This document shows positions 16,715-63,711 of a stretch of DNA of 64,000 bases, one piece after another. The first letter of the stretch is position 1; every line of letters begins with the position of its first letter. The notes below the pieces were generated by a model. That model ran no database searches. It saw only the letters and a list, made by a program, of their open reading frames with translations, and was not told where the DNA came from. Position numbers and translations under genes: made by a program. The stretch lies in the NCBI GenBank assembly GCA_965649825.1, contig OZ287698.1, positions 1,317,949 to 1,381,948 of the forward strand. Reading direction: 5' to 3'. The stretch is from Penicillus capitatus (taxonomy: Eukaryota > Plantae > Chlorophyta).

Positions 16715-16863
16715 GACTTGCTGGTTCTCGCCAGGGGGCGCATCTTCCTGGGCCGGGGGAGCGGCCGCTGGTTCGGCAGCGGCTTGTCTTTCTTCTTCGC
16801 GCCTTTGTGCCTCTTGTCGTAACCAACCAAGATGTTGTAATAGCGCGTCGTCAGGTACCCTCC

Positions 16864-17067: not shown

Positions 17068-17538
17068 CTCACAAGCGCAGCGGAAGTCTTGGAATTGGAT
17101 GAGGATGGGCGAAAGCTCGGAGGCCACACAAACAGCTTTTGCAGCAAAGAGCGACTTGTTACAACTTTGGGAATAGACAGCGAATGTTTTTGACAGATTG
17201 TATGCGGTTCAGAACACAAGTGTAAACTTTTGATGTTTTAAACGAAAGGTGGTTTATGTGTCCGACCCTCGTTTAAATACCCAGTCCCCGATGTGACAGT
17301 AGGAAAAGTATAAGAAGTTCAAGAGTGAGTTCATGGTGAGGTTCCGAATGAGACGTAGGAAGTTCATTACGAAACTCTAGAAGTTTCCTGAGAAGCTCAG
17401 CGTGAACTTCGCAGGGACTCACTCCTTGTCATCGCGACTCAGCAGCGACGGTTACGTTGCGTAGCCAAGAGTGAAAGCAAGACATCACTACTGTCACCGT
17501 CACATCACCGTTTCCTGCACTTCGCGCCTTTCTTCACA
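16928..17538 (-). repeat. 5' LTR (611 bp)
   Basis: Copy of 9012-9622, followed by TSD GGGCC. Confidence 0.97.
17272..17279 (-). promoter_or_regulatory. TATA-like box in the LTR (copy at 9356-9363)
   Basis: Minus-strand TATTTAAA, placed upstream of the uORF and ORF1 in the sense direction. Confidence 0.45.
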
Positions 17539-30367: not shown

Positions 30368-32230
30368 TTACCACTGCAAACGTTGCACAACCGTTTTCTG
30401 CAGAGCATCTAATTTCTCGATCAAATTGATCACCGGAGCGTAGTGATCTGCCCGAGTGCTCTTATTCTGCAACTCGAGCACCCCCTGGACCTGAAACAGA
30501 CAGTCGACCACGGAAACAGAGCGACATACGGAATGACTTGATCTATGGAGCCATCGATGCGCTTGTCAAGGATCAACATCACCAAGAGCTGCTCCACATC
30601 CACCAACGAGATATTGAGCTTTTTAGATACGAACTTAAGAGTCACTCTTGTGTACGGCTGAATAAGTTTCAGCAAAACTTGTGTACGGACATTTGTAAGA
30701 AGATCTTCCAAGTATTGTCGGATGAAGGCATCTCCCAAAATACTTTCCCTGACAAACAGACACGATGAAGCTGCATATCTATCCAGTGATTCAATGCTCT
30801 TCTCACTCTTCCTCTTTCAAAATCCTTTCGAAGGAATTGATGTCATTGCGTTGGTAGGCATCAACCAGATCTGTCATAGCTTTGACCTGATGCAGGATAC
30901 AGGTAAGGGGACGCCAGTCGAAGGAGACAAACTTCGGGGTCATTCTTGTACGGCTGAGATTCCTGTGCCGTAAAGGGATCGACGGCCGATTCCATCAACA
31001 TCGTCGCCAGGACTAAGTACTTCAAACACTGAATACGACGCGAGGCACCAGCTTCATCGTAGCTCTTGAACGCCTAATGCCACACGTTCTAAGATAGATT
31101 GCTGGCGGTCTAGATCACTTCGAAGAAATCGGTGGCGGCATTTGACCATTGTTCATCTGCCATATGCATCTTGCCTCCACACTCACGTATGATTCCCATG
31201 ATTCTGCGAGGTATTCGCGATTAAATAGCTCGATGTGCCACGACACACCTTGGATGGGGGATAGCAGATTTCACAGTCAAGGCGTCGCGATAGAGTTCCT
31301 TCAACTTTTTGTTGTTCTTCTGTTCGGTATACATCTGAATCTCGACTGCGTAAATCTACAGTCACACACTGTGATTGCAGAACATCGGTGGAATGTCACC
31401 TCCAGCAGCTGAGTGCCTTTCTTCATATCTGATGAGCCGTCTTCGTTGGTGCAAGACCTATAACATCATGCAAACGCTATTTCTTGTCTCACCGAATCCC
31501 ACACACTTCTTCAATGCCTTCACAAGTTTTTCCAGCCGGCCGAAATCGTTCTTCTTGAAATAAAGGGCACAGAGTTTCAAATTCGTTTTGAACCAAAGCC
31601 TCTCGTTCTGCGATTCCTCCAGCGACTGCAACGTCATCTCATAGAACTGCTGAAGGATTTCGGCGTTTTTCAACTGGGAAAGAAACTCGAGCAGACTGTT
31701 GATCTTCTTCTCACTCTGATTGCGGGTTACCACGTTTTGTTTGACATAATCCAGCATCTGTCTGCACATCGACAGTGTGAAGAAGCTTTTCTGGAAAAGG
31801 CGAACCTGTATGCATCCATCATTTTTGTGTACTCTCCCAGATGACAGTGGATCTTAATGATCTGCTTCAACGCTTTGAATCCCCTGTCGAGAAGATCATC
31901 GCCGTTTGGAGCGAGGGAAACGATCTGACCATTCCCCTGGTTCTGATTCCATTTCCATAATGCTCTCAAACCCTTCGCGAGCCTGGACGAGCGATTCTCC
32001 CTCTCCTAAAATCCCTTCGTGGAATGCCTCGAGATCAGTTCACACAGTGTCGTGATATCGGACGCGTGCCTTTGGAATTGTAGTACTGGTTTTCCACATC
32101 GACGTCGACGTCCATGTCGTCTTCGGAATAGTAGACATCACTGATGTCACTGTACTCGTAGCCTGCGGTAATAGACAGAGATAGACCAACGAGAGTCGTC
32201 TTTCTGCGATAACTCGCCATCATAGCTCAT
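30368..32230 (-). CDS. CSN2: COP9 signalosome subunit 2, multi-exon
   Basis: [59 protein letters not shown] and [12 protein letters not shown]. The first exon MSYD joins through a GC-AG intron. Confidence 0.93.
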
Positions 32231-38406: not shown

Positions 38407-41400
38407 CTATAGAAAGTTCATGATTATGACATCCGAGCACATGTTGCCAATGATTGCTCCGAATTGTTCGGTGACGACTTCAGATGTTGAAGAGGTGCCC
38501 TCGGGTGGCACTAGGTCTCTGGATTCCAAACGGTATTTCCCTTCATCGTAGCATTCCTTTAATCTCTCAATCATAATATCAGTGTCTTCGGTGATTCTGC
38601 TGAAAAGCAAATGGATGTTCTTCTCTCTCAGTTTCTTCATTAAGGTTTCGACAGTGAGTCCAAAGGGATCGCCACGTGGAAATCTGTATGTAAGAGTTGT
38701 AAAAAAGCAGCAGTCAATGTTTACGAACGATCACCTGTCGCTGATATTGCTCCCATGGAGATCTGTTCCATGTCCTGGAGCATCGGCGATAAGAATGCAG
38801 AATTTCACCTTACTGCTCCATCCTTTTAAGTCTGCTGCAGCGTTTAGGCCTCCAAGAACGTCTTCGGCCGTGTCCCCTCCTCCGTCCGCTTTCTGCTTTG
38901 AGAGAAACTCGCGCAGGTTGTTAGTTCCTCGAGTAAAAGGACAACGACATATCTGTTCATCGCCGTCTCCATAATCTCTGTACGCCACCATACCGAAATT
39001 GAAAACCAATTCCACAGGGGAATGCTTTTCCTGAATATTCGCGAAGATAGTGTCACAAATGATCTAGATATCACAAAGAAAAAAAATCAAAGATGGACAA
39101 TCAAGGTAAGCATCTTACGTGGATCTGTTCGACAGCAGCATTCATCCATGGTGACATAGATCCAGTGCAATCCATGCAGAAGCAAATATCCACAGTAAAC
39201 ATAGAAGGTCTGTTTCCACGTATTAATCGCGCTTCTCGCTCTTGGCGCATGCGTGCCAATATAGAAAACACTGCATCGTGCTCCTCAAGAATGTCTCTGA
39301 CGGATTCGTTGGTGCTTTCTGGGAGAAGGCGAAGATTCAACCAGGTCATAGGATCCCCAAGGCTGGCATTCTGCTTCAAAGCTATAGTCTGCATGGCATT
39401 CCTCATTCGTTCGATGGCATTTGGTAACAAATGAGGAAAGGCTGCTGCAATCCACTTGTTGTAGCAGCTCTCGACAAAGGAAACTTCCGGGCCGACGCTG
39501 ATGGCCAGAACATCTATTCCAGAAGCTTCCAGCTTGGTTAGCGCAGCAGCGAGTCGTACACCAGAGCTTCCATATCCATCTGTTACGATAAAGATCTTCT
39601 TGGGTCCTCTTACGTTACTGGATTCCAATAGTTCTGCCGCGAAGAGCAGTGCATCGGCATCCATGGTCGCAGGTTCGTGTATCATCTCTACAGTCTTCAT
39701 GAGCATGGCCACGCATACATCTTCCCACACCATATCGGGTAGTTTAATAGGATAGATCTGTTCGGCAAACAGAATCACAGAAAAGGTTTCAATGTTCATC
39801 TGCTGAAGCGCCCCGATCATCAAGAAGAGCGTTTCCAGAGCGCAAGCCTGGTTGACGCTGTGCTTCATGGAGACAGAGATATCCAGGAGGAGCACGATAG
39901 CATACTCGGACTTGCCGCCGCCCTTCTTGTTTGCAAAGATCTTCTTTTCACTTCCTTGGGTTGCCAGGTGCTTGATGTATCCAGGAATGTGGATTGTTGG
40001 CCCATTCACGTCTGCTCTCTTTCTGGTGTAGACGTTCTGTGGAAGATAGCTCTCCAATGCTTCTATCACACGACTCATCTCCGATCCCAGTCGTTCTGCG
40101 GCCTGCATCCAAGCCGTTTCTGCCGTCTTCAGATGCTCTCTCATTGCTGAATTGGTCAACATGGTGTCATATTGCCTCTGGAGCGTTTCTGACAATGTTT
40201 CAATGTCGACTGGAAACGGCTTCATCTCTTCCTTAATCAGTCTACTCATCTCTTCTGTGAAGGGTATACAATCTGGACGATAGTCGCATTCAAAGAAGCT
40301 TTCCCTTGTGAAATGTCGCGGCAACATAGGCAACATGTTTGTCCCAAAATTTGAGCAGACGGCATCGAAGTCAACGGCCGAGAAGTCTGTCTCCGAAACG
40401 TTGCATACGATTGGGACGGATTTCATTCCATTTTCTGACAAAGCAGAGTTTTTAATGCTGTTGTGAATGCCACACATCTGCTGTTCCATCAGACTGACAA
40501 GAATTTTTGGCAGTGAATCAATGTTCCTCACATGGAGCATTTCGAACTGCGCACCCACACTTTTCCACAGTGCTCTTATTGAGCTCATCAAATCCTTCTG
40601 CAGATCGTCATGGATGTTGAGAACTGCCAGGCTAAAGTCTTTTTCTCTGCACACAGACAGATAGTCTTCTCTTCGTCGTTCTTGCGTCAAGCCGTCGACG
40701 ATCATAAGCATCACTCTGTGGCACTGGCCCTTCTCTTCACCGGAGAGGCCTGAAGGCCACACCTTTTGAGCCACGTTCTTGATAGCTGATGCAGGGAATG
40801 TCCCTTCATCGAAAGTGAAAGAGTCGATGATCTGCTGACCGACGTTGATAGTGAACGGATCTTTCATCAGCTTCTGCATTCTTTGAGAAGTGCTGTCACC
40901 AAAGAGTGCCACCGCAAAACAGAACTCCAGTCTGCGAAGCATCTCCATTACCAGAACAAGGGCTTCTTTCGTTTGGTGCTCTTTCGTGATCATGGATCCT
41001 GAGTTATCGACAAGAAGACACCACTCGATAATGTGTCGTTCAGCAGAAGCTTTATACAGCGCCGTCTGACTTTTTTCCAAGCCGCGCATGATTGTCTTCA
41101 GGCATTTAGCAAAAACAGCGTTATCCAGAAGCAATTGATACGTCCAGTTGTCGTGGCGTGATGGTTCTATATGGACTGGATCTTCTACTTCGTGAGTCTT
41201 CGTCGCAGCGCTGATCTCTTGTTTCTGATCACAGAGAGATGAAATACTGCGCATCTCTTCTACTTGTCTACGAGTAGCTTCGCGGCTAGACCCTCCGGCT
41301 TTTACAAGGATCATGGCCGAATCATTATCCACAGCCCCAGTGAAGAGGTCGGGCTGTTCACGGAGGTCTTCGATCTTTTGGATTCTCCCACCAGAAGGGG

Positions 41401-44400
41401 CAGTTTGGCCTAGCACACCTATGGTGTTCCATGCCATATGCTCTGGGAGCTTGAATGTCCTTGTCTCTTGGGGATCGTTAGCTATATCATCCATTGATCC
41501 TGCTCTACTTCTTGGTGTCCAGATTCGCGCATTTGAGTCGATCTTGATGTCCATTGTCGCATCCAACAACACAGGACATCTTCTTGTGCTCCGAGATCCA
41601 TCCATCACGGCCGTTGACGTCAAGAAACCATAGAAACTGGATCTCTCCGGAAGTTGATCGGAGCCATCTTGCTCGTCGACTTTGAAACGGGGATTTTGGT
41701 GTTTTTGCAATTTTCGAGGGAGACCATAGATGATCGATTTTCCTTGAGTTGAATTTGAAAGGTAATCGTTTGTTGGTGGCATATTGAAGTCTATGGTGTA
41801 TCCGTGGAATGCATCTGCAGCTTCGGCCTCTTCCAGAAGATCTTTAACTTCATCTGAGAGCGTCTTCCTGGGAATTGCATTCAAACAATGCACAACTCTG
41901 CAGCAGACAAGTTGCACAGTGTCTGGTATTTGAAGGAGGCTAAAATCATCCAAGTATTTCCGCAAAAATTGAAAAAGAAAGACAATATCGATGCCTCCAC
42001 AGACAACACGACTTTCAAAGTCCTTTCCTTCCTTCTCCTTCAGACGGCGACAAAAGCGAATGGCCTCTTCAAATAGAGAACACCACTGCTCGGTTATTTC
42101 TTTCAGATAGCTAACTGCAGTCGCGATATCTCTAAATGTAACAGTAATTAGATTGCCATTTTCAGTGATACTCTTTATGAAGTCTTGGATCTTGAGCCGT
42201 CTAGCGATATGTTCAATTGTGGACTCCACGGTCTCGAGACTCTGAAAAAAAGTCGGAGGCAAACTGATAGATTGCTCTACTACATCGTCCGAGTCTGTTT
42301 GATCTGATCCACTTTCCACAGTAGAATCTCGTGAGGCATTTTCTGACAAAAAATTGAGTTGACTGCCTGGGATACTGAGTGATGACAAAAACCACTTCTT
42401 ATTACTGCCATCTTTCGAAACAACAGTATTGATTTCTTGGGGCATGACCTCATCCGGTTGCACTTCAAACGCGTTTTCTGTCTCAATGTCGTCATCTTCA
42501 TCGCTAACTTCTACTCGATACGGTATAGGTGAGAAGCGGGCTTCCTCACATTCGAATTTCACAGGTCGAGCTTCGTGGAGAGCGTTTTTCTCTTTCCAGA
42601 GTTCTTCTCTAATGAATCGATGCAATGAAAGAAGAAGTGTCATCTTACCGAAGACACGCGCTTCATTGGACAACTGATCAGGAATGGAACAAGTACAGAA
42701 GCTGAAAAAGATCTCTTTCAGGACGTCGCTTTTCTTCTCGTACTGGCTCCAGTTTCCAAAAGATGCGATTTGATCAATAAATGACTTTATTTCGAGAAGT
42801 CCAGAGAGTGTCATTCTTCTATCTTTTTCTATGTGACAGACGGATTTTTTGCCTTTTGCGATCTTCAACAGACAGATGAGTGTATCAAAAGCTTCTTTAT
42901 CGTATATCTTGTAGATCTCTTGTTCAGTTTCTTCGTCGATGACCACGGCGTCATTCATGACTTGCTTCAGCGCGTGGACGAGTAAAGAATGATGCTTCTC
43001 AGGTAAGACTGCCTCTATAATCTCCCTTTTGAAGTTCTTATCGCCTCGGATTTCTTCCACAAGATCCAGAACCTTGTAAAGCCTGTCCGCGTTTGAGGTT
43101 TCCTTGGCAAGAATCTTGCAGAGAGAAAGGACGCCGTCCCATGAGAAGTTTGCTGCCACCCCTTTCAACCCATTGATCACTTCAGGTTTCACAATAACCA
43201 CATCCTTTAGAGATGCGACAAACTGAAGGACTCTCGAGGCTAATTCGAATGGATTAGTGGAGCTCGAAAGATTCTCAGGACTGAGAGCATTCAGAGCCTG
43301 CTCGAGAGATCCTGCCTTCTTGTCCAAAAGCGCTTTCTGTTCTCCATCGCTGCTTTTCAGATCGAACCACGCAAGAACAAGGTTCTTGAGTGGATGTACA
43401 AGCGCATGACTTCCTTCGAGGACGAGGTTCGTAATCGTTGACAAGATATCATTGACGGCTTGCCGACGAGAAGGATTTCCCATTTCACTTAGTCTTCTAG
43501 GGATCCGTATATCTGGGTAACGTGCATTGTTCATGATCCTCAAGACATTGTCTTTGAGTGATGCTAGGCTCTCATTTGAAATGCCAATGTCATCCAATTG
43601 CCCAAAGAATGATTGGATAACGATGTGTTGGATGTGTCGCCTTCTCTGCTGTACGGATCTATAATCAGTCGAGTGGAGCAGCGATAGTGGATTCACGAGG
43701 TCTTCAAGATTCTCCCTCCGCAGGATCTCCCGTGTGATTTTCGTTGAATCCGTGGGAGTGTTCACCACACCAACAGGATTGTCAGAATCCTGCTTCCTGG
43801 ACAGCAGCGTATTTATCAGGTGATGTACAATTGCATTCACAGATCCGTTGCTTCCACTTCGTGCCAATGCGCAAAATGCATCAAAGACACCTCCTGCAGT
43901 CTTGGAACATAAGCCTTCTATCACTCCTTGCGTCTCGGCGTTCACCAGGAAATGTCTGAGGACATCAAGATCGATTTCTTCTACACTCCATGTCTTCAAT
44001 GTCATCAAATTCAGAATGACTTCTGGCATGGCGATACGGCGTAGTTTAGTTAAGCTCTTTTCAATTTTTTGACCAAAAAGTTCGCACTCTCGAACCCCGT
44101 CTCCACACTTCACCAGATTTTCGAGCACATCAAGAAACTCAACACGTTCGTTCAGGTTACGCACGAGTATCTTTTTCAATCGCTGGACGCAATTCGCAAT
44201 AGTCTGTCCTCCTTCTTGGCTGCCTTCCCACATCTCTCTGCAGAATTTATCGAACAGAGCTGCCGTCGATACTTCTGATATGCTATCACTGAGGCATGCA
44301 ACTGCGGCATTCCATTGCTGGTCTTCTTGGCAGTCTGCTCGCAGCATGTACAGAGCCACGCTTATTCTTTGATGGAGAGGTGAAAGATCATCAAGGAAGA

Positions 44401-47400
44401 TGGAAGGCAGACATGTCTCTCCCAAACTTTGTTGACTGCCACTCCCAAAATGTTCGCGAACACTCTCAAAGTATTCTTTGATTTTCTGATAAGTGACTGG
44501 GGTCTCGTCCGATTCTCGAATCGAGCCTTCTGCGTACTGAGCACATGTTTCTGGGGCTTTTTCAGGACTGCTGAGAAGAACATCTGTTGCTTTTTCTTCA
44601 GACAATGTCCATTCAGATCTTAGCACTTGCATCTCACTGAGTATCAGAAGAGAGAGCGCCTGGAAGGTGGATGTATGATTCTGGAATGCTAGGAGAAGAC
44701 GGAGATCTGGCAGACAATCATCAGAATTCCCCCAGAGAGGACTGCTTGCTTCACTGGATTTTGAACATAGTCGCATCATCTGATGTGCAGCAGAAGAAGC
44801 AGATCCCACGTATGTCAAGATAACAACATTGTGTCTCAGCGGAAGGCACAGTGACAGGTCATCTTCGATCAGGTAATCATCTTCAGACTGAATTTGCAAT
44901 GTCTCTACGATCCACCCCGAAGCCTCCCCTGCCTTCAATTCGATTTGAGTAACCACACAGTTGTGTTTTGGCTGATACTCTAGTGGCATATCATCCGAGC
45001 CAAAGTTCCATGGTCCCCTTGTGTCAGACCCTGTCTGCCTGATTGCCATTTTTGACTTTAGTGTCAGAAACTGAATCTGGGACATCTCGACTGGACGAGT
45101 CTTTATCAGAACATGTTTCTTGGTTATAATCTTCAGCTCTTTTGTCTTCTGGCCGTTGACATTGACAGGGGCGAAGAAGAAATTGCGAGGACATAACTTC
45201 AGCTCATTAAAACCAGGCATCTTCAAATGCACTGTGAACTTGAGTTTCTTCTGGTTCTCGGTGGTGAAAACAACTGTGGATTCCCTTACTCGAAGAGTCC
45301 TCACTTCCCAATACATTTTGATTCTCGTGCGGCTGCAGGGATTCAGGACATAGTGTGGCTGATCGAAGGTGAAATGTTCACTGCTGGGTGGATAAATCTC
45401 TACACGGACGTTGGCCGTGTTGTTAATAATGTTTGCTGCCTCCAGTGTGACTGATCTGCATCCCTTCTCAATGGCCTGCAAATGTAATCGCTCCATTTCG
45501 AAGTCGACATCCATCTCCAGGAACTGTGGCTTTGGTTCCATCCACTTTCCTTCAACTATCAGTTTCTTTTTGATGCATCCTTCGATTTGGATATTGAGTC
45601 CCTGCTGCAGTGAACCGACTCCTTGGTTTCTCATTGAGAGTAAGATGTCAGAGGATGTCTCGTGAACACCAACAGTGCCGGAAACCCCAATGACCTTCAG
45701 CACCGACGATGACGGAGTAAGACGGTAGACAACAGGAACTGTCCCTATATTTCGAATACGAATGGCTGCCTGTGTTTTCTTTCCTGATGTAATCACTGGT
45801 AAGCGAAATATTTTCCTTCTAATTAAGAGCCCTGTGTCTGTCACCAACTCATATTGTGGCTGTGTGACTTGAGCAATGATCGGAATGTGTTTCATGTTGC
45901 CAAGGATTCCAATGATCATTTCAGTGTCAACCTTCTCATCCATGTTACCAGGACTCATCGTCACTGTCAGAGATTGAGAACTGCGTGCATCCAAGTGGAA
46001 GGATTGTGGAGAGATCGTGAACTGAGTTCGTGTCTGGCTGAACTGCACTTGACCCTTGACCAAGAGAGGAAAATCAGTCACATTATCGATCTTCAAGGTC
46101 TGTTCAATGTCCTGATTGTTGGGGACAACCGTGCCAAAATCAATGGCATCTGTACTCAGTTGTACGGCCAGCCGCTGGACTTCGACGATCATCTTAAATC
46201 TGGCATCCAGTCTTTTGTCGTCGGATGTTATCTTCCACATCTCTGCAATCTTGCCCGTGGCATTCAAATCTATCTTGAATATGAAGTGCCAACGGGTCTT
46301 TCTAGAAAGTACAACAGTCGCTGGCCCGGTCTTGTGAAACAACTGGGAAGACGGATCAATCGCTGAGAGATGAACACGGACAGATTCATTGGTCCGATTC
46401 TCCACTTCGACATCATGGACGTGAGAGCTCGGAGCTGATACTGGGGCATCGTTCTGATGAAGGACAATGCCGAAATCCACTGTGCAATCTAAACTGCTCA
46501 GTGATAACGTTCCGTCTTCCTCACAGATCATAATCTTCGAAGTGTGGCGAAGCTTTGTGCCGTGAAGAATGTTCATCGCATTCTTCCTCAGTCTTTGGGT
46601 GACCTTCATTTTCTCGTCAAGCCGCTGCACAAGTCTTATGCAATCTGTTCGAGCCCTCCCAATGGACAGTGCCACTTCCAACTGCGACTCCCAGTGCAGC
46701 AGCGTATCCTGGTCAAATGGAGAGAAGGATTTCTCAAGGGAACTTTTCCATTCTTGGCAATGATTCTCATCAATCTTCAGTTCTTTTTCTGATGTAAGAC
46801 AAACAGCGTGTTGACATATCTCAGCAGCGTAGAGCTCAAACAAGGTGAGCTTGGCTTCCTTTCCAATGCACTGGAGTTCATTGATGTCGAGCTTCAGCTG
46901 TTCCAGTACAGACTGCATCGTAGTCGTCCATACAGACTCCATCTCCCTCGGTGAAACATCGGCCAGAGACGGTACTTCTTCGACAAGTTTCATCGGAATA
47001 TCAGAATCCACCTCTGGTGGAGATTTGAAGATGAGTGACAGTATCTCGATTCCAACGTTCACGGCATCCATGTGTTGTGTTTGAGCTTCTGTCACGTTAA
47101 GACTGTTCAGGATCTGGTCCAATGCGTGTGAAATACTTTCCGCAAATCTTTTTCCCTTTATCACGGCTTTCACATGCCATGCATTGTTTATATACATCTG
47201 ATCACTCTCACTGAATACAGACGTTTCATTTGTTTCTTCTGCACACCGCTGAAATTTTCTTTCGATTTCCAGGCAATTCGCGAACTGTTTGTAGAGGTCA
47301 TCGTATTCGTGGTAGTGATTCCAGAGCCCCCCGAGGAAGTGACTATAGACTTCATCTGCCCGTGTAAAATTCTGTGTCCCAATGACTCTAGATGAAGACG

Positions 47401-53400: not shown

Positions 53401-56400
53401 ATTCGCTCTGCGCCAGAAGCAATCTCTCGTAACAAGATGTGAAAGAGAGATCCTCAAGCGGGGCAAAATAAATGGAGAGATCTTCCACAGTACGCCATTG
53501 CCGCGCGATCCCCCTGACCTTCTCGACGCCTGAAGACTGAGACTGTCGTAACGGAACAGCTTCCAACAAATCAGCGAGCTCCTGGAGCACATCGGTCATA
53601 TCTTGAATCATGAAGCGTCTGCTCTGCCAGTCGGTGTATGTGGAGTTGGCAACAAGCTGTTTACACAGAGACAAAAGCTCCTCTGGATGATCGTAGATAT
53701 AATCCATCTTCCGCATCTCACCATGGGTGACGGCCTTGAAAAACTCCTTTACACAATCACATCCAATCACGTCACAGAGGTGATTGAGTTCAGCCTCATT
53801 CCTTGCTTCTTTGGGAACTTCTTCTGCCAGCTTCCTGATCATCATCTCCTCTTGTGGATACAGCTTTACAGCTATCCGATTTAGAACGTGAAGAACGAGA
53901 CTTTCAAACACATCCATGTCTGAGATCTTCATTATGCATTCAAACAGAATCTTAAGCGAAATATGGACGCCTGTTGCAAAGATCAGACGGATGTTTTCGC
54001 TCTCTGTCAGAAAAGTCTTAACAGCATCTCTATTCTGTCGAATGGCATAAAATTTGGATGGTGGCACCACTGCTGTCGCCTCACAAGCCCTTTGAATGAC
54101 TTCCTTTAGTTTGATCCAATCTGCTTCATCTTCTAGGACGGATGCATAGATCCTCCACGCTCCCCAGACAACAGCATTGAACACAGGTTGATCATTCTTG
54201 AGAAGAGAGGTGACGAGAGAGGCGGCTTCTAGTAGGGTACGGAAACTTATGCCAGAGTCCTTTGCGATTGTAATCTCGCAGTTCTTAGCAAATTCTTTGA
54301 CTCTTGCATGGACAAAGGAGAGCAGACGTGCAGCCATGTTGCCTCCAGCATGCGAAGCAAACTTCTCTGAGATAATCTCGACGACTTCATGTCCCTCCAG
54401 CGATTCGAATGTTGCTTTGGAGATTCCCGCATCAATCTCGGGTAGCCAGATTTTGATCATTCTGTTCAGAAGTGGGTTGGACAGCTTGTATGTGTTGATC
54501 CTCCCACGATCCGCTGTCGCAAAAAGGCGAGTATGTGGATGAATACCGTGGTTTCTGAACAACTTTTCCCCTTCTGCGTGTTCGTAGAGGTTCAAGAAGG
54601 GCTCTTCTTCAAAGAGTGAAAGCACTCGTTCGATCACTTCTGGTGGTGCGGCATTGATGTTGTCGAACAGAACGAATGTTCCAGATTTAAGAGCCTTAAC
54701 GAGATCAGAGGTCACAAAACGGAAGACGATGGTTTCTTCCGCATCCTGCAAGACCAACAGTTTGCTGGAGACCCCGTGCAGTTCTTTAGCAAATGGTAAG
54801 CTCGAGCCTCGATCAACTTCTTCCAAGAAATCCAGTACATCTGTCAGTCCTTGAATAAGTTCTCGGATGGTTTCCGGATCGAGCCTGACAATTTGTCGGT
54901 CATTCACCTCTTCTTGGGATAGAAGGCTGATGTCAAATGTCTTCTTCATCGCTCGATAAAACGCAATCTGCTTCTCTTTGGATCCCTTTTCGCAAAGCTC
55001 AACTCCAGCTTTCATGATTCTATTGCGAAGGTGCAGCAATTTCTGGAGTGCTTCGCTATGAATAGAATCCGTTCTCGCAGGTAACCACTGGCCAATTAAA
55101 TCGGACACCTCATACTCTCTGTGCAGTGAGAGCAGCAACAACGGTCGGCCTGTCAAGGAAGCTAGCTCTTTCACCAGACATGTCTTCTTGGAGCATGTGG
55201 GTCCCTCTAACAAGACAGTCCTAGTGGACTGACTCGCCGCCGCCAGCAATTCAAGTTGTGCAACTGTCTCTTTTGTGTGCACCAGACATCCATTAGATGC
55301 ACGATTGGGATTCTTGTTGAGGTAAACTCTTCCGATGCGCACGAGATTGCTGACAGATGTATCGATAGACGTGCTGTTTACCTCGTCGGCCAGGAGCTTT
55401 GGCGGTTTGATGATAGCATCAATGGCCTTCTGGACACATGCCTGAGCTGTCTGGTCCTCGAATCGATGCTTGAAGACGAGCTGCAATGCATTGCGGAGAA
55501 CAGAGTTAATCACAGATGCCTTGTCTCCCTTTGAAAGTTCCTCCCTTGAACTACTCGTGGCAACAATCTTGTAGTGGGACAATTGGTCGTTGACATTGCT
55601 GGCGACAATGTCTCTAACAGCCACGAGGTCACGCAGATTAAATCTTTGTCTTCTACTGGCGCCTTTAATCTCTCCCATTTCGACCAACGACTGCACTTTC
55701 AAAAAAACTGCGAAGAGCTGATGGACGCTGTCTTCATTGACCACGTCACGATTGATGTGGTCCCTGAAAAGCTTCTGTAGAATCTCAGACAATTCATCAT
55801 TGCCCTGAGGATGGAGCTCTACGGTTGTGAAGAGGTTCCTGATGGATCTGGAGAGTTTCGTTCTGCCTCCACCCTCAGCAGCAGGATTCATCGTGGCAAA
55901 AATGTAGACATCATTCACCGCCAGCTTCTTCGCTCCTGACTGGCCTGGAATGACCATTCCATGTTCAATTACCGATCCGTTGAGTAAGGGAACGAGAGAT
56001 TCCAACACTTGAGGTGACAGCAGATTGATTTCGTCCAACAGTATCCATCTGCCTTTTTTGATCGCCTCGACGAGTTTGCCATCCATCCACTCAAACGTTC
56101 GTCGACTGTCTTTGTACTGTGGCACGACAGACCCAAACAACTGCTCTGTTGTCGTGTCGCTCGAACAGTTGATGCGCTCGACACCTGTCTCCAAGAGCCC
56201 GGCCACTTCAATTACTGCTGCCGTCTGCAAACAAACACAGACATTGGAGATGTTTAGATACGACAACCTAATTCTGTTACTTTGCCAATCCCTGGCGGCC
56301 CTTCGAGAAGTAGAGGCGTCTTGGTACTGATAGAGGCAAAAATGCGAGCTGTGTTGTCCATGACAGTTGGAGTTGGATATAGAGATGGTTTCCACTTGTT

Positions 56401-59400
56401 ATCCTCTCTTGTTTGGCTCTCCTCAATACAGGGAAGGCTCAGTGTGAGACCTACACCATCTAATCGAGCCAGGCGATCGCCCTTGTCACTTCGATCATCG
56501 ATATTCATGGTAATAAAAGCGTCACTGTGTCCTTCAGTTACTTTTAGTGCATCGAGCTCATTTTCCAATTCTCGAACTTCGTCACTGAAGTGATTCTGGA
56601 GGATGTTCTTCTGCTTCTCTGGCGGTAATCCAGCGAGGTAAAGGTACTTGGCCCCCAGTAGGATGATTCTCTTGAAAGACATTGTTTCTCTTGGATGGTG
56701 TGTAACGAATCTGACCCATCGAAGAACTCTTCGAAAATCTGCGGATGGGTTCTCGTGCGTTTCTCCCATGGACTCGAATCGGATAGCTTGGATAGCTTTC
56801 TTCAGAGGAGGGGCACAATCATCATAATCATCTCGCAGATCACGGAAGACCTCTGCATCAACGATCGACATGATATCATCATTTGAGTATGCTGGGATAT
56901 GGATTTGCGTAATCCTGCTCTTGGTGGATGCTGAGAGACGCGGTTTTGTGGAGGAAGAAGCCAGATTTGCCGTCGCTACGAAAGCATAGTCTTTCTCAGG
57001 GATTTCAAACCGCTCAGCTCCAATTTCACTGAGAGACGAATCTTCAGGGATTGAGAACGATGGATCCACCTCCAATGCACTGTTCAGTCGTTCCGCAACA
57101 GACTGCGGACATCGATCGTAGTCCTCGATAACGCAGATGTGCTTCAAGGTGATGGCATTGACAAACGGGCCATCACAGAAGACAAAGCAACCTTGACTCT
57201 TGATGCGTTCGGCAGATGAGATAAACTCACACATCTGTTCCATCCGGCGAACTGCTCGTTTCAGGGCAACTGTGAAGTGTCCGTCAAATACCATGCTCAA
57301 CAAACTGATAACCTCCCTGACAGTTTCGCGGAGAGATTCAAATGCGCTGTACTCGGGCTCGTCGATTGGCTCACTCGTTACACGGATCTCAAAGCCTACT
57401 TCCGCGTCCGATTGTTGTTCGGAACCGTCAGATGCGGCTGTTGATTCGTCTACTCTCTGATCGGTGCCTTCTTCTTCACCATCAGATGCTCCCCAGAGGG
57501 TGTCGCTACTCGAATCATCATACGATTCTCTGTCCTCTGTACTGGATGAGTGAGGAATGCTGGATTCGCCTTCAGAATGTGCAGATTGCGTATCATTCAC
57601 TGTTGTAAAGGATTCCCGATCGTATGACATCTCTGATCTTCCTCTGAGGGTTTCGATGAGTACATTCACTCTTCTGGGTAAATCATGTGAGCAGTCTAGC
57701 CGTCGAATACTGTACTCGCGTTTCCTTGGCATGTTATTCACAGCAAGTACTCCTTCGATTTCTTTGAGAATGAAGTTGCCAATGGACAACATCATTTCGA
57801 GGACCTCTACTATCGATGCCAGATGCATTTGGCCGATCAGTTCTGTTGCTTCGGAATCCGAGGTCAAGTGTATCATCTGCGCTTTGCCCTCCATCTGAGA
57901 GATCTCTAGCCATGTTCTGATGAGTTCTGTCTTGAACGAAGACTCTCCATACAAGAGAACTGGTTCTTTTGCCTTCATTGCAAATGCCAGTTCAACAAGC
58001 TTGTCTTGAAAGATCTTGGGCGGCTGCTTTTCGATACTGTCATGTTTCCACAGACGGCTTCGATTGAGTCTGTATCCGCTGAAGGAAACACGCAGAGGCC
58101 CTTGGAAGAACAGAAGTTCATTTCTCTTCTCTTCAATGTACTTCTTCATGCAGGATCTTGCGACAACATCTGCTCCTTCTCCAAATGCCTGCTTGATAAG
58201 TGAAAAGAGCTGCACTTGCTCGTCTTCTGTTGAAACCAGGGGATTGAGCAATGACATGACGACAGCAGGCCAGGAAGTTCCATTTTTATTCTCCACTTGG
58301 AGAAACTTGAATCTGCGAACCAGCTTGATCAAGTCTCTCATAGTCAGACGGAAAGTCCCGGAAGATGCAAAGTAGAGAGTGGACAGGTTCTCTGCGTCTT
58401 CCATGGTCACAACACCTCGATACTCTTCCTTTTGGAATCGCCTGTAGATGATGTTAGCAAATTCGTCTTGCTGAAAGTCGTCGACATCCACCTCCAGAAA
58501 ACGATTTCGTACAGTGACGGGGAGAAGTTTTCTTCCATCTCCTCCTCCGTGGAAGGGATTCTGGGTTGCAAAGAATCTGAAATCTGGATGTACATTGACT
58601 GTCATGCCGGTGCCTGGAATCTGAACGATGCGTGATCCCTCCAGGAAAGGCATTAATGCTGCTGCAACAGAAAGAGGCGCAAGATTAAACTCATCTGCCA
58701 CAAACCAGTCTCCATTCTCCATCGCTTGGATGAGGACACCCTTCGAGTAACGGAATCCTGCCTTTCCAGGCAGCCATGTCCCAAAGTAGTCCTGCAATGT
58801 GGTGGTGTCGCTGTTACTCAGAATGGCGACCTTTTTGCAGAACCCGCGAAACTTTCTTAACCCACTGACCAGAGCTGTCTTCCCCACTGCTGGTTTTCCT
58901 TCGAGGAGAACTGGTTTGTTTGTACAGACACCGAGGAGGACGACATTCGCATAAGCTTTTCTTGAATCCGTCAACACCAGATCTGGATGGATATCGACGC
59001 CGTCAAGCAATTTCAGTGTGCTCATCGCATCAGGTGGACAGCTCATGTGATAGAGCAGTTCTTTTCTTTGCTGAGCGTCCTTCATGCGGAGGGCAAAGAC
59101 TGCCATCAACGCAGAATGCAGACAGTCTTTGAAATCCGTCTGGGGGTATTGCGCCATAAGATTTGTCGTGATGTCCAAGAATGTGACAAAGTGTCCGAAG
59201 TTGCTTCTTCCTCTCTTCTTGCTGAGATAGTTTCGAATCTCTAAGCAGTACATGCGAATATCTTTGACATGCACTCGACAACGTTTATCGCACAGAGAGC
59301 ATTCCAGCACAGCGCTCAGGACAGAGCCGAACTGACTGTCTGGCAGCTGACCAGGATCATCTACATGCACTGTGAGGAATCGGTTGGCGAGGGAAGCAGT

Positions 59401-62400
59401 TAGTTCATTCGATGTGCTGTCATATCCCCTCGAAGCGACGCCTTTTGGAGTGTAGGTAGCAATGAACTGGAATCCTTTTGCAGGACCAGGCACCGTGGAC
59501 ACTGTTCCATCACTCAGAATACGACAATGGTGGCTCCCCGTTTCTCCTTTCTCTGACAGACAAAGGACCTTCGGAGATTCCAGGACAGGATTGATTCTCT
59601 CTTGCAGCACTGCTTCTGCTTGGCCAATGTTGTCCACAATAAAAACAGTGCCCTCTTTAAATGACCTTGTCAGTGGACCATCCCTCCATTCAACGGAGGG
59701 ATCCTCACAACTGTTCTCCTTGGGCAGATGTTCTCCAAGCATGGCGGAAGGTTCACTCTCTGCCGTGAGGGCGATCTGTTCATATCGGTTTCTCAGGAGG
59801 AAGGCAATCGTCTTTGCCAGACAGCTTTTGCCGGATCCAGCGCATCCTTTGATTAGAATGGGCTGTTCACTTTGCAACGCAGCGATCAGGACCGTCAGTA
59901 GTTCGCATGTGTGATCATTAAGTACTACAGGCATCTCTGGCACGACGAAGCTCTGAAGGTTCACAGATTCTCGATCGATACTCCAGTTCTCCACAAAAAT
60001 GTCGAGAATGACCATCCGGGCTTCGTGGTTTCTGAAAGCAGAGCAGTAGATCTCGGCGCCAAGTTGACCAAGTTCTGCAGAACTGTCGCTTCCGAAGCAC
60101 CCTTTTTGCAGTGCATTCTTTATCCATTTCACCAGCCAAAATTCAGAGAATGAAGTATACACTCCATAACATTGCATGAAATCCGGCTTGAGAATAGCTT
60201 CTGCGACATCTCTGTGAACAGACATGCACTGCTCGATCGTTTTCCTGTCACTGTCCTGCAGTGATCTCTTCGCAGAGAAGTGTGTTTTCCAAAGGGACTC
60301 TGCATTCAATTTGCAGCACTGCTTATCATTGGACCTCAGAGCAGAGTATGCCTGGATCATCCTGTCGATATTGGCGACAGATATATCTGATGAGACGTTC
60401 TGTTGGCCGACAGACAAGCCGTTCTTGTTTAGAACATTCCTAACCAGCTGCCGGCCATCTTCTCTAAAACGGCAGCCATAGATGAGCCATGCATAATTGC
60501 CGAGATCTATGTCTTTCATAGGAAGATGTTGAGCAGTTGATATCATTGCCGTCCACATCAACAGCTCGCGGTTTGTAATGACTGTGTGGCTGCCCGTCTC
60601 GTAGCACTTGTTCTGGATGACGTCTCTGACATTCCAGTGAAACTTTGTCATCTTTCTGGCCACGTCACGAACGAGATCCATCTCGGCACTGCCAAAGTGA
60701 TGCTCTAATGTTGACTGTACAATCAAATCCCACTCTTCCTTTGGTAGCTCTTTGAAGTGCATGACAGAGAACTGGGAAAAGAAGGCAGAACTCATTCGCT
60801 CTCTCTTACCAGCTTGCCACGGATTCTGAGTGGCAAACAGTCTGAAGTTTGGATGCTTCTTCAGGACCCGCGGAGGCGTCAGTGCGGAGCTTCGGTCACA
60901 AAGCACTATTTTGCCGTCCTCTAGTGCATCAACGACCACCTTGAGTGTACTCTCTTCTGCCAGATTCATCTCATCAAGCAGCACCCAATTCCCTTTCTCG
61001 AAGCTCCTGGCGAATGGCTGCACATCGAGCACAATCTGGCCGCTGGAATCGAACGATGTCTTTGCCAAGAAGTCCTCTGGAGTAAGATTCGAAGACATGT
61101 TAAGACGGATCAGTTCGATGCCCTTCAAATTTGCCAGCTCCATCAGAGTAGCCGTCTTGCCCACTCCTGAAGATCCATAAAGCAATACTGGGCGGTCATA
61201 CGTTACTACCTCTTCGATCTTCTTGATATTCTCTTCAGTTGTAGACGTTTTGATGAGAGATGTGGTCTTCTTGCTAAAGTGATCGCCAGAGCTTTCCATT
61301 CTCTCTTCGGCCTTTAATGAAGATAAGATCTCCTTTCTCAATGAGGCACTTGCCAAGTTCGGTTGTTGTTGTTGTTGGTGGTGGTGACTGAACATACCAG
61401 CCATCTTCCTTACATCATCCAATGATGCCGTTTCCGTAACGACTTGAACTGTTTTGCCTTCGGGAAAGGTGGCGGAGAAGAACGGCTGCAAAGACATGTC
61501 CTTCAAAACATCTGCTTCCATGTCTGCTTCTGTTACACTCTCTATTCTCTCTTCGATGGCAAGATACACCAATTTCATCAGACTCTCTTTCTGGGCATGG
61601 ACTTCATCTTTTTCGAGACGATCGAACACCATGTGCAGCTTCTGATTGATAATACTGCAGAGAGCCCTTTTGTCTTTCTTTGACTGCCTCTTCACGAAGG
61701 AAAACAGCATGTCAAAAAAGGTAGTGTCAGAAAGAGACTCTTTGGTGAGACCCGCTTCGAAAGCAGCTGACAGCATCTTCTTTACGACAACATCCGATTG
61801 ATGTATGTCTCGTGTCATAATTCGCATCAATAGATCGAACTCATCGTCGGGTATTCCGAAATTGACAACACCCTGTGCGGTCAATTTCAGAGCCGGTACA
61901 GCAGTTTCGGGATGCCGCAAGTACAGCAGCAGATGCACTAGACGAGTCAAACAGAGAACAGTCTCGATGTTCTGTCCTCTTGGGACACTCATCAGATCGA
62001 GGATGCGATTGCGCACTTCTGCCCAAGTTGACTCATTGATGTCAGCGTCGTGCAATGCCTGTTGTCCGTTAGCAGATTTCATCAGCCAACTCAATGCCAG
62101 ACGAAGCCAGGTTCCTTCGTCATCATCGTGACGCAGAAAAAGATCAACAAGCGTGCAGGCTTCATCGATTTTGGGGTGCTTCGTCCATCCGAGGATCATC
62201 TCCACAGAACAGGATTTCTGAAGCGGCATACAGAAATGCTCTCCATTCTTAAGTGCCAAGTTCAACAGGCAGGGAAAAACGCAAAAATCAGCAATGTTGT
62301 GACAGTAATGAGTAAAGGATTCAAGTTCAGAAGACAGATCTTTTGACCCTTGTCTTATATGTGCCAAATCTAGATAAGGAGGCGTAAAGAGAAACAAACT

Positions 62401-63711
62401 TCCAAGCGACTGAAACACGTCGACATTAAGATTTGAAGCAGGTACAAATGCGACTTCGTCAGAGAAGAAAACACTAAAAAGTAAAAGGCGCTCAAATTGC
62501 CATGCCTTCTTTATATCGCTCCCAGGCTGAAAATCTGTGATGCGCCTATAACAGGTTTCAAAAAAACTGTGTGGTAATGGATGATTAATTGTGCGAGCAC
62601 AGGAAGACACAAAGGCATAGAAATCCCCAACAGTGAATGCAGTGAGATCTTTAAGAAGAAAAGAAGCTTCAAAAAAATAACTAAGGATGTCAAGTATGAG
62701 AGGACCGTTTTTGATCTCCTTCTTTAGTAAACTGAAACGCAAGGCTTTAAACAACTCGTCATTGTTCGAAAGAAAGATAGTGTTAAAGATTTTGCTATGT
62801 AACTGAGATTCGGCGAAAGCAGAAGATGCGTCATAAGCACGTGAGAGGCCCGAGATCAAGTTGGCCACATCATTAGGAAACAACAATGATTTTAATGCAT
62901 CAACGATCAGATCGTCGGGTCTCTTTCTTGGACCGATGGTGCAGTAACAGTCACGATCTTGTCTTTCATCACTCCATGTCAGCTCCGTCATTTCCTGCAC
63001 GGAGATCTCTAGACATGACTGACGAGGAAACTGGTCTGTGGAAATGGGATTAATGACCAAGGGATTCAGGAAAAGAGCAAGAAGCTCATCAGAGCGAACA
63101 ATTCTTCCAAGGGCTTTCTGAACCACGTCATGCTCTCCGGAGTCACTTGACGAGCCCTGTTGCGTCATGTGCGTTCGCATTTCGTACAATGCCATTTCGA
63201 TGAGACTCACAATGGCATCTATCTCCTGCCCCGTACACAGCGGGACGGGCAGGAGATCCAATAAGATACCCAAATCCGGCTGCTCTCTGCAGTATGTGCA
63301 GTGCGTTTCGCGTTTATTGAATTTTCCTTTTGTCACATCGGCGACGCGAAGCTTTGATGCATCGTACTGTCGCGAAAAGAGAATAACGTTCCAAAAATCG
63401 CGTTGCGTCTCCGCATCCGTTTGTCGTACGAACCATTCGAGAAGACGTGCCAGTGGCCCGCACAACTCCCCCTTTTGTTCAAGCACTCCAACGGCGTAAG
63501 CGTAGACGACGCAGCGCAAAAGGGCCTTGGATCCGTTCTCTGTGAGTTCAGTTTTGTCTGCCTCGACGGAGTGATGCTCAAGGAAAGAGTTGATGCAGTT
63601 GCGCGCGTCGCTGAGCGAATCTCGTTCTAGACGTCCTTCAATGGAAGACTCCTCCAGTGCTTTCTGGAGAACGTCGAGTTCCCGCCACTTTTGTCTTGAT
63701 AGACGCGACAT
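38407..63711 (-). CDS. Giant (about 8365 aa) midasin-like protein: six AAA+ modules, long linker with Ig-like repeats, three VWA domains
   Basis: Exons 63711-56281, 56224-49280, 49234-39119, 39063-38735 and 38683-38407 sum to 25098 nt, a multiple of 3. GT-AG introns are 56, 45, 55 and 51 nt. Six Walker A/B sets are present, and MIDAS motifs DNSGS, DISVS and DCTGS. Confidence 0.9.

What the first reader, a model, noticed from the sequence alone, without database searches (positions are those of the whole stretch)
38407..63711. An 8365-aa midasin-like giant that is not ordinary midasin
Seen: an N-terminal helical region of about 830 aa with a short polyQ, six AAA modules, more than 4000 aa of linker including Ig-like repeats, and three VWA domains. 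Established: Mdn1/Rea1 is about 5000-5600 aa with a long D/E-rich tail and a single MIDAS domain that pulls Ubl-domain factors off pre-60S particles. Inference: a paralogous mechanoenzyme with different and possibly multiple substrates, conceivably a surveillance or defence role like other giant AAA proteins such as RNF213. Its function appears uncharacterised.
Basis: partly seen in the sequence, partly recalled or inferred. Interest (0 to 1): 0.75.

Follow-up and report, generated by a model that had tools for sequence, protein, structure and literature searches.

The report
Giant midasin-like ATPase, separate family
The window holds a 25-kb gene for a giant six-module ATP-driven protein machine that is related to the ribosome-assembly factor midasin but belongs to a separate, widespread and unstudied family, and this copy carries a premature stop codon.

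Summary
The gene is real. It lies on the minus strand at 63711-38407 and has an 800-aa N-terminal region with a QQQQQ run, six AAA+ modules, about 4,200 aa of linker with a β-rich ASH/HYDIN-type Ig array, and three VWA domains.

Only three introns are supported. The fourth "intron" is conserved coding sequence holding an in-frame TAG (49237-49235) where three close homologues have TAC (Tyr). The reading frame is therefore 8,380 codons, broken at codon 4807.

The protein is not canonical midasin:
- Canonical midasins form a clade with 100% bootstrap support that excludes it.
- Walker B is intact in AAA1/3/5, not AAA2-5.
- It lacks the AAA2 insert and has a 270-430-aa insert in AAA4.
- It has no D/E-rich region.
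- It has two extra VWAs. Only VWA2 carries the midasin-type pre-MIDAS element.

Relatives with the same ring signature occur in rotifers, Monosiga, Bryopsis, Chlorarachnion, Ectocarpus, Hondaea, Epipyxis and many environmental eukaryotes. Databases leave them unnamed or label them "Midasin", "Dynein heavy chain" or "MoxR-like ATPase". I found no paper on them.

The likely mechanism is midasin-like, with MIDAS-mediated pulling on unknown substrates. I found no evidence for a defence role.

The parts
38407..63711 (-). Whole gene: ATG at 63711, terminal TAG at 38409-38407; 8,380 codons after removing three introns
   Evidence: N-terminus matches L004 and P0074 from residues 1-7
56225..56280 (-). 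Intron 1 (56 nt, GTAACA..TGCAG); splits the AAA5 Walker A motif GPPGIGK|T
   Evidence: same position in L001 and L004; P0005 is continuous there
49235..49237 (-). In-frame TAG at codon 4807, where L001, L002 and L004 have TAC (Tyr); a premature stop, not part of an intron
39064..39118 (-). Intron 2 (55 nt, GTAAGA..TCTAG), inside VWA3
   Evidence: the spliced product aligns without a gap to Monosiga P0067
38684..38734 (-). Intron 3 (51 nt, GTGATC..ACAG), inside VWA3
61312..63711 (-). N-terminal region, aa 1-800; no Pfam family; QQQQQ at aa 779-783 (61377-61363)
   Evidence: partly conserved in Bryopsis P0092 and colinear in P0074
59962..61254 (-). AAA1 (aa 820-1250): Walker A GSSGVGKT, Walker B LLDE (intact)
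59002..59961 (-). AAA2 (aa 1251-1570): Walker A GCAGSGKS, Walker B IVDN (no Glu); no H2 insert
58042..59001 (-). AAA3 (aa 1571-1890): Walker A GKPAVGKT, Walker B VADE (intact)
56422..58041 (-). AAA4 (aa 1891-2430): Walker A one residue short (GESSFKT), Walker B IED; 269 aa between the two motifs, including an acidic/Ser-rich insert (about 57864-57202)
55346..56421 (-). AAA5 (aa 2431-2770, interrupted by intron 1): Walker A GPPGIGKT, Walker B LLDE (intact)
53756..55345 (-). AAA6 (aa 2771-3300): Walker A GPTCSKKT, Walker B LFDN (as in midasin AAA6); 174-aa spacing
46532..53755 (-). Linker part 1 (aa 3301-5708); no significant Pfam or PDB match; contains the premature stop
44792..46531 (-). β-rich Ig-like array (aa 5709-6288, room for about five ~115-aa repeats); Pfam detects HYDIN/ASH-type Ig in two stretches
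   Evidence: the low-confidence model is all-β
41039..44791 (-). Linker part 2 (aa 6289-7539), no family match
40436..41038 (-). VWA1 (aa 7540-7740), MIDAS motif DNSGS intact
39326..40108 (-). VWA2 with a midasin-type pre-MIDAS element (aa 7850-8110), DISVS; counterpart of the midasin MIDAS domain
38515..39208 (-). VWA3 (aa 8150-8345, spans introns 2 and 3), Pfam VWA_4; signature DCTGSM..AYRDY..GGGD..DAPGHG

Best explanation
The gene encodes a member of a distinct, old and widely scattered eukaryotic family of single-chain six-AAA+ ring mechanoenzymes. The family shares ancestry with midasin (MDN1/Rea1) but is not its orthologue.

Shown:
- The ring is colinear, module by module, with the midasin ring.
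- AAA6 shares the DN Walker B with midasin AAA6.
- VWA2 carries the midasin-type pre-MIDAS element.
- The family keeps intact Walker B motifs in AAA1, AAA3 and AAA5. AAA2 and AAA6 have DN, and AAA4 has a shortened P-loop.
- It lacks the autoinhibitory AAA2 insert and has a 270-430-aa insert in AAA4.
- It has no D/E-rich tail.
- It has an ASH/HYDIN-type Ig array and two further VWA domains.

Inferred by analogy with Rea1/Mdn1 and bacterial MoxR-VWA pairs: ATP turnover at three alternating sites remodels the ring and the long linker. The C-terminal VWA domains, whose MIDAS motifs DxSxS (VWA1, VWA2) and DxTxS (VWA3) are present, each hold a metal ion that grips an acidic residue of a partner protein. 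The machine would then pull partners out of a large assembly. The substrates are unknown and are probably not the pre-60S factors.

In this window the copy is interrupted by a TAC-to-TAG nonsense codon at codon 4807. As assembled, it would yield only the N-terminal region, the ring and part of the linker. The exceptions would be a sequencing error, a heterozygous allele, or bypass of the stop.
For: Domains.

PDB: the ring matches only Rea1/Mdn1 (E 1e-106 and 1e-80), then NorQ/CbbQ/CobS.

Score tiers: family hits reach 700-1019 bits, canonical midasins from all supergroups at most 392 bits.

Trees:
- The family clade has 95% bootstrap support, apart from midasin.
- The canonical midasin clade has 100% support and excludes the window.
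- The window groups with L001, L002, L004, P0074 and Bryopsis at 100%.

Ring signature: the Walker motif pattern is conserved in about 25 family sequences. Insert pattern. In Rea1, AAA2-5 are functional and AAA1/6 lack Walker B (PMC6286127). No D/E-rich region.

VWA region:
- VWA2 matches the MIDAS domain (hhalign E 5e-12).
- The pre-MIDAS element is aligned.
- The triple VWA is conserved in Monosiga, Chlorarachnion and Rotaria.

One gene: L001 is colinear over aa 1-8380 with only the three introns. P0235 and P0075 run from AAA5 to VWA3. The transcript-derived Chlorarachnion ORF of 7,408 aa spans ring to VWA3.

Selection: dN/dS against L001 is 0.12-0.36 in every segment, including downstream of the TAG.

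Nonsense codon.
Against: - No experiment, localisation or partner is known for any member, so the mechanism rests on analogy.
- The linker shows no detectable similarity to the midasin linker, though the profiles were shallow.
- Structure prediction failed, so docking geometry could not be examined.
- Deep branches of the family tree are weakly supported, at 26-65%.
- The Bryopsis member has lost all Walker B glutamates, so ATPase activity is not universal in the family.
- This copy has a premature stop, and the second copy in the same assembly (L004) has an insertion and a frameshift.
Confidence: 0.7

Rival explanations
1. This particular locus is a recently inactivated allele or young pseudogene. 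The family is real, but the copy in this window no longer makes the full protein.
For: The in-frame TAG lies where three homologues have TAC, inside conserved coding sequence. The only other copy in the same assembly, L004, carries a ~184-nt insertion without GT..AG ends and a frameshifting deletion.
Against: There are 3,573 codons downstream of the TAG with no further stop or frameshift. dN/dS there is 0.12-0.36, the same as upstream, so any inactivation is very recent. A single-base assembly error or a heterozygous site would look the same. A 45-nt cryptic splice that restores the frame cannot be excluded without RNA data.
Confidence: 0.35
2. It is the organism's only, merely divergent, MDN1 orthologue and acts in pre-60S maturation.
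For: The best PDB and Pfam matches are midasin. VWA2 has the pre-MIDAS element. Some relatives are labelled 'Midasin' in UniRef.
Against: It lies outside a canonical midasin clade that has 100% support and includes plants, green algae, animals, fungi, oomycetes, kinetoplastids, parabasalids and apicomplexans. It differs in Walker B pattern and inserts, has no D/E-rich region and has extra domains. Members also occur in rotifers, within animals, whose sampled canonical midasins form their own clade.
Confidence: 0.03
3. It acts in the cilium, basal body or centrosome, with the ASH/HYDIN-type Ig array targeting it to microtubule-based structures.
For: The Ig hits are to HYDIN/CFAP65/ASH/Cep192-type families. 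The Ig array is conserved in Rotaria P0007, P0080, P0081, P0111 and P0113. From general knowledge, not tested here, all named hosts have a flagellated or ciliated stage.
Against: The PapD/MSP-like fold is widespread and not specific to cilia. Most eukaryotes have cilia, so the distribution says little. There are no localisation data. The phmmer map detected the Ig array in Rotaria P0007 and four unnamed relatives only, not in the other named members, some of which are partial models.
Confidence: 0.2
4. It has a defence or surveillance role, like RNF213 or bacterial MoxR-VWA conflict systems.
For: Bacterial MoxR-VWA modules form conflict systems (PMC7159879). The family is patchy in distribution and has several copies per lineage with disabled copies. 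The linker evolves faster than the ring.
Against: No effector, E3, nuclease, protease or death-type domain was found. PADLOC gives only P-loop-level hits, and the EAD11 match (E 0.02, 15 bits against a cut-off of 26) is noise. All segments are under purifying selection.
Confidence: 0.1
5. The region holds several adjacent genes rather than one.
For: Prokaryote-style gene callers split it into 2-4 ORFs in every assembly.
Against: The splits fall at the short introns or at the TAG. L001 is colinear over aa 1-8380. Single ORFs in relatives span AAA5 to VWA3 (P0075, P0235). A transcript-derived ORF spans ring to VWA3 (P0104).
Confidence: 0.03

Closest known systems
Midasin (MDN1 / Rea1)
   Same: Six AAA_5-type modules in one chain, alignable module by module, with midasin AAA lid domains. 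AAA6 has a DN Walker B in both. There is a long linker. VWA2 is a C-terminal MIDAS-type VWA preceded by the same basic pre-MIDAS element.
   Different: - Separate clade.
- Walker B is intact in AAA1/3/5 instead of AAA2-5.
- No AAA2 H2 insert, and a very large AAA4 insert.
- An 800-aa instead of a ~300-aa N-terminal region.
- The linker is more than twice as long and has no detectable similarity.
- An Ig array, no D/E-rich region, and three VWAs instead of one.
Bacterial and archaeal MoxR-VWA pairs (RavA-ViaA, CbbQ-CbbO, NorQ-NorD)
   Same: The same AAA+ clade is coupled to a MIDAS-bearing VWA partner that binds the substrate. NorQ, CbbQ and CobS are the next-best PDB matches after midasin (PMC7159879).
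   Different: Those are homo-hexamers of one small AAA+ protein with a separate VWA protein. Here six diverged modules and three VWAs are fused in one 8,380-codon frame.
Dynein heavy chain
   Same: A single-chain ring of six unequal AAA+ modules with a mechanical linker. Relatives are sometimes mis-annotated as dynein, for example Hondaea GBG29381.1.
   Different: No stalk or microtubule-binding domain was found, and no significant dynein-specific families. AAA_6 falls below its cut-off and AAA_7 matches only around the P-loop. The linker is C-terminal rather than N-terminal to the ring.
RNF213 (mysterin)
   Same: A giant protein with a six-module AAA ring of which only some sites are active.
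   Different: No RING or E3 module or any other catalytic domain besides the ATPase was found. RNF213 did not appear among the PDB sequence matches.

Membership tests
Canonical midasin (MDN1/Rea1) | Six tandem AAA_5-type modules in one polypeptide | tested here: met
   Pfam AAA_5 in 4+3 stretches and six P-loop modules, colinear with midasins
Canonical midasin (MDN1/Rea1) | Groups with canonical midasins in a ring phylogeny | tested here: not met
   The canonical clade has 100% bootstrap support and excludes it; the family clade has 95%. These are NJ trees only.
Canonical midasin (MDN1/Rea1) | AAA2-AAA5 hydrolysis-competent; AAA1 and AAA6 lack Walker B (PMC6286127) | tested here: not met
   Here AAA1/3/5 have DE, AAA2 and AAA6 have DN, and AAA4 has ED with a shortened P-loop
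Canonical midasin (MDN1/Rea1) | Autoinhibitory H2 insert in AAA2 | tested here: not met
   Walker A to Walker B spacing in AAA2 is 65 aa here, against 149-169 aa in midasins. The large insert is in AAA4 instead.
Canonical midasin (MDN1/Rea1) | Long D/E-rich region before the MIDAS domain | tested here: not met
   No 100-aa window reaches 28% D+E. The two canonical midasins profiled have 45-52% over several hundred residues.
Canonical midasin (MDN1/Rea1) | Single C-terminal MIDAS domain with a pre-MIDAS element | tested here: inconclusive
   VWA2 has the element and an intact DxSxS, but it is flanked by two further VWAs.
Canonical midasin (MDN1/Rea1) | Homologous ~1,700-aa linker | tested here: inconclusive
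   hhalign of a three-sequence family profile against a midasin profile found nothing outside the VWAs. The profiles were shallow.
Canonical midasin (MDN1/Rea1) | Removes Ubl-domain factors (Ytm1, Rsa4) from pre-60S particles | not testable with these tools
   This needs biochemistry or genetics.
New midasin-like family (window, L001, L002, L004, Rotaria, Adineta, Brachionus, Bryopsis, Chlorarachnion, Hondaea, Epipyxis, Ectocarpus, Monosiga) | Ring signature: AAA1 DE, AAA2 DN, AAA3 DE, AAA4 P-loop one residue short, AAA5 DE, AAA6 DN; no AAA2 insert; large AAA4 insert | tested here: met
   Two members depart from the Walker B part. Monosiga shares the inserts and the triple VWA but lacks DE in AAA5. 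The Bryopsis copy has lost the Glu in AAA1/3/5 and has EN in AAA6.
New midasin-like family | C-terminal VWA1-VWA2-VWA3 module | tested here: met
   Conserved in L001, L002, P0075, P0235, P0080, P0104, P0109, P0111, P0225 and Monosiga. Not detected in Rotaria P0007, Bryopsis P0092 or GEMP01 P0008.
ASH / HYDIN-type Ig (PapD-like) domains | Pfam match above the curated cut-off | tested here: met
   PF22544: 41.3 bits (cut-off 25.5), two stretches. PF15780 ASH: 28.9 bits (cut-off 27).
Dynein heavy chain | Dynein-specific AAA_6/8/9 modules, stalk and microtubule-binding domain | tested here: not met
   Only P-loop-region matches: AAA_7 over 65 residues, and AAA_6 below its cut-off.
RNF213 | E3/RING module attached to the AAA ring | tested here: not met
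   No such Pfam match anywhere in the protein at E<=1.

The most novel reading that the evidence does not exclude
The family is an ancient, possibly LECA-age, third lineage of single-chain six-AAA+ ring mechanoenzymes beside dynein and midasin. It would run on three alternating active sites (AAA1/3/5). It would use three MIDAS-type VWA 'hands' and an ASH-type Ig array to remodel a large non-ribosomal assembly, perhaps at the cilium or centrosome. It would have been lost repeatedly, which would explain its patchy distribution.
Probability: 0.3. Interest if true: 0.8.

Novelty: new variant of a known kind. Interest (0 to 1): 0.6.

Why it matters
Midasin and dynein are the two well-studied single-chain six-AAA+ ring machines. 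This is a separate relative with about 50 representative clusters at 50% identity. It is found in rotifers, a choanoflagellate, green and brown algae, a chlorarachniophyte, a labyrinthulid and a chrysophyte, and has never been studied.

It differs from midasin in exactly the features that control Rea1: which sites hydrolyse ATP, the autoinhibitory insert, the flexible acidic tether, and the number of MIDAS domains. It is therefore a natural comparison for asking how ring chemistry is turned into pulling force.

It probably points to an unknown cellular assembly that needs mechanical remodelling.

Databases label its members 'Midasin', 'Dynein heavy chain' or 'MoxR-like ATPase', which hides the family and can mislead orthologue counts.

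Tried and rejected
- AlphaFold2 on the VWA region and on the Ig array, with three-sequence alignments, gave pLDDT 31 and 37. I ran no fold search on these models.
- hhalign on the full 5,000-column post-ring profiles gave one-column artefacts. I repeated it in pieces.
- Species identification failed:
  - CSN2 scores about equally to a 439-aa and to the human-length CSN2 chains in PDB.
  - In the database, CSN2 hits only unnamed environmental proteins at about 55% identity, then plants and Closterium.
  - The S4-domain ORF is simply organelle- or bacterial-type.
- The look-up of a window ORF by exact product failed.
- Two ENA canonical midasins (P0046, P0047) come from other samples, so co-occurrence with MDN1 in the source genome stays untested.
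- PADLOC found nothing specific.
- Four literature searches found no description of the family.
- I considered a stop-codon reassignment and rejected it, because the gene's own terminal stop is also TAG.
Full report
OBSERVATION. The minus strand between 63711 and 38407 carries three very long ORFs in series (2495, 2386 and 3309 aa as listed) plus two short terminal exons. Pfam finds:
- AAA_5 in 4+3 stretches (E 3.7e-60 and 8.9e-31);
- the midasin AAA lid twice;
- a HYDIN/ASH-type Ig domain;
- three VWA domains, matching VWA, VWA_2/CoxE and VWA_4.

Six P-loop modules start at aa 846, 1289, 1605, 1922, 2471 and about 2818. The first 830 aa match no family, and QQQQQ sits at aa 779-783.

GENE MODEL. 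Three introns are well supported, at 56280-56225, 39118-39064 and 38734-38684:
- They have GT..AG ends and are 51-56 nt long.
- The first restores the Walker A motif GPPGIGK|T.
- All three recur at the same places in homologue L001.
- The spliced product aligns without gaps to the Monosiga protein.

That segment is not an intron:
- In P0002 (73% identical) the region aligns residue for residue without a gap: VLRIVGH*NAHVDAQ against VLRIVGYYNAHIDAQ.
- At the DNA level L001, L002 and L004 all have TAC where the window has TAG.
- Most other differences in the segment are at third codon positions.

The frame is thus 8,380 codons with a nonsense codon at codon 4807. A code change is unlikely, because the gene ends on TAG too.

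Downstream of the stop there are 3,573 codons with no other lesion. dN/dS against L001 is:
- 0.36 for the linker after the stop;
- 0.33 for the Ig array;
- 0.32 after the Ig array;
- 0.12 for VWA1-2;
- 0.19 for the ring and 0.32 for the linker before the stop.

Any inactivation is therefore very recent, or the base is an error or one allele of two.

RELATIVES.
- The window comes from ENA assembly ERZ25074695, contig ctg340422_42x.
- A second copy, L004, lies on another contig of that assembly.
- Two more copies, L001 and L002, lie in ERZ26696514.
- L001 is colinear over aa 1-8380 with only the three introns.
- L002 has one extra canonical 53-nt intron.
- L004 has a ~184-nt insertion without splice ends and a frameshifting deletion, so it looks disabled.

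A search with aa 1-4799 gave clear tiers:
- the close copy at 65% identity;
- a second tier at 706-1019 bits (an ENA protein, Rotaria sp. Silwood1, EukProt GEMP01, a Logan protein);
- canonical midasins of animals, plants, fungi, an oomycete, trypanosomes, Trichomonas and apicomplexans, all at 392 bits or less;
- other giant AAA_5 proteins, including a 7,261-aa Monosiga protein.

An exhaustive HMMER search with AAA5-AAA6 plus the post-ring region found 3,005 representatives. Several dozen of them align over the family-specific post-ring part.

Named members are:
- Rotaria sp. Silwood1 and Silwood2, Adineta ricciae and Brachionus calyciflorus;
- Bryopsis sp. KO-2023;
- Chlorarachnion reptans;
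- Hondaea fermentalgiana (labelled 'Dynein heavy chain'/'Midasin');
- Epipyxis sp.;
- Ectocarpus sp.;
- JGI 'MoxR-like ATPase' entries.

The Rotaria gene sits between an I-set Ig gene and a nuclear hormone receptor gene, so it is a genuine animal gene.

The Ig array and the triple VWA recur in many of these. The Chlorarachnion ORF is transcript-derived (MMETSP) and runs from the ring to VWA3. Together with L001, P0075 and P0235, this argues against several genes.

NOT CANONICAL MIDASIN. In NJ trees of the ring (1,717-1,721 columns, 100 bootstraps):
- canonical midasins form one clade, with 100% support in the larger set, that excludes the window;
- the family clade had 95% support in the smaller set;
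- the window groups with its close copies, ENA P0074 and Bryopsis at 100%;
- deeper branches inside the family are weak, at 26-65%.

Ring identity is 34-39% to family members and 22-25% to midasins.

The module-by-module alignment gives a clean signature:

| Module | Family | Canonical midasin |
|---|---|---|
| AAA1 Walker B | DE | ED |
| AAA2 Walker B | DN | DE |
| AAA3 Walker B | DE | DE |
| AAA4 | P-loop one residue short, E[DN] | GETGxGKT, DE |
| AAA5 Walker B | DE | DE |
| AAA6 Walker B | DN | mostly DN |

The midasin column agrees with the Rea1 structure paper, which states that AAA2-5 are functional and AAA1/6 lack Walker B (PMC6286127).

Spacing between Walker A and Walker B shows that the family lacks the AAA2 insert: 58-71 aa, against 149-169 aa in midasins. 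In Rea1 that insert is the autoinhibitory H2 bundle. The family instead has 269-433 aa in AAA4. Monosiga follows the family pattern.

No 100-aa window reaches 28% D+E. The two canonical midasins profiled reach 45-52% over several hundred residues.

Profile-profile comparison of the post-ring part matched only VWA2 (E 5e-12) and VWA1 (E 6e-10) to the MIDAS domain, and nothing in the linker.

VWA2 alone carries the basic pre-MIDAS element seen in all midasins. VWA2 is therefore the counterpart of the MIDAS domain, and VWA1 and VWA3 are additions. VWA3 has the signature DCTGSM..AYRDY..GGGD..DAPxHG, which is shared with Monosiga.

MECHANISM (inference). The shared ring order, the shared AAA6 DN and the shared pre-MIDAS element indicate common descent with midasin. 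They make a midasin-like action the best guess.
- ATP-driven ring changes would be passed through a long linker.
- VWA domains, each with a DxSxS or DxTxS motif present, would grip partners through a metal ion.
- Partners would be pulled out of a complex.
- Three predicted active sites alternate with three degenerate ones.
- With no D/E tether and no AAA2 insert, control must differ from Rea1.
- Three VWAs allow several ligands, or multivalent binding.

The ASH-type Ig array hints at cilium or centrosome association, but that fold is not specific to those structures. No effector domain supports a defence role. PADLOC gives only P-loop-level matches, and a 15-bit EAD11 match is noise.

ORGANISM. 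The source was not identified.
- CSN2 in the window scores about equally to the two kinds of CSN2 chain in PDB.
- Its best database matches are unnamed environmental proteins at about 55% identity, followed by plants and Closterium.
- The nearest named relative of the giant is from the green alga Bryopsis.

A green-algal or other poorly sampled protist source is possible, and a metazoan source is unlikely. The neighbouring genes I examined (CSN2, the biotin carboxylase, TsaD) are cut into many small exons, whereas the giant has three introns in 25 kb.

LIMITS.
- Trees are distance-based only.
- Structure prediction failed because few sequences could be submitted.
- The source assembly could not be searched for a canonical MDN1.
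- Four literature searches found no description of this family. That shows absence from the held library, not absence from all literature.

Noticed in passing
window 9012-17227: A full-length Ty3/gypsy-type LTR retrotransposon. It has two identical 300-nt LTRs (9012-9311 and 16928-17227) and two 953-aa ORFs on the minus strand. One ORF holds an aspartyl protease domain; the other holds RT, RNase H and integrase. GC is about 60%, against 45-52% around it. Identical LTRs suggest a recent insertion.
   Followed up: partly
L004 ~17213-17395 and ~22100-22115: The second copy of the giant gene in the same assembly as the window looks disabled. It has a ~184-nt GC-rich insertion without GT..AG ends that brings in a stop, and a short deletion that shifts the frame.
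   Followed up: partly
L002 ~9936-9988: This homologue has one extra canonical 53-nt intron (GTAAGG..TTTTGCAG), at the equivalent of window aa ~4556, that the window and L001 lack.
   Followed up: yes
P0092 (Bryopsis sp. KO-2023, GMH34713.1): The nearest named relative has lost the Walker B glutamate in AAA1, AAA3 and AAA5 (EG, DN, DG). It may be an ATPase-dead member of the family.
   Followed up: no
P0114 (4005 aa, source not looked up): A different giant with six nearly identical, fully canonical AAA modules (GPTASGKTS / DE in every module) and a C-terminal VWA. It appears to be another, separately derived six-AAA+ VWA protein.
   Followed up: no
P0066, P0068, P0070, P0072: Further giant AAA_5 proteins outside both midasin and this family. 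They are a DEP-domain fusion (4,517 aa) and a group formed by a Blastocystis protein (5,773 aa) with two ENA proteins that have a VWA2-like domain (100% bootstrap).
   Followed up: partly
window 1-38400: The neighbouring genes examined are split into many small exons, with introns that look about 50 nt long. They are a biotin carboxylase-type gene (1562-~5000, +), TsaD/Qri7 (5967-7180, -), an organelle-type S4-domain ORF (7204-7914, -), a Cu/Zn SOD exon (8403-8858, +), an amino-acid permease (~25695-26285, +), TMBIM/Bax-inhibitor ORFs at 27861-28508 and 29089-29724 (+), and CSN2 (30433-31853, -). The giant gene is strikingly intron-poor by comparison.
   Followed up: partly
window 49214-49279: Two 45-nt GT..AG segments span the premature TAG and would keep the frame if spliced out. 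Such a rescue would delete 15 conserved residues. Only RNA data can tell whether it happens.
   Followed up: partly
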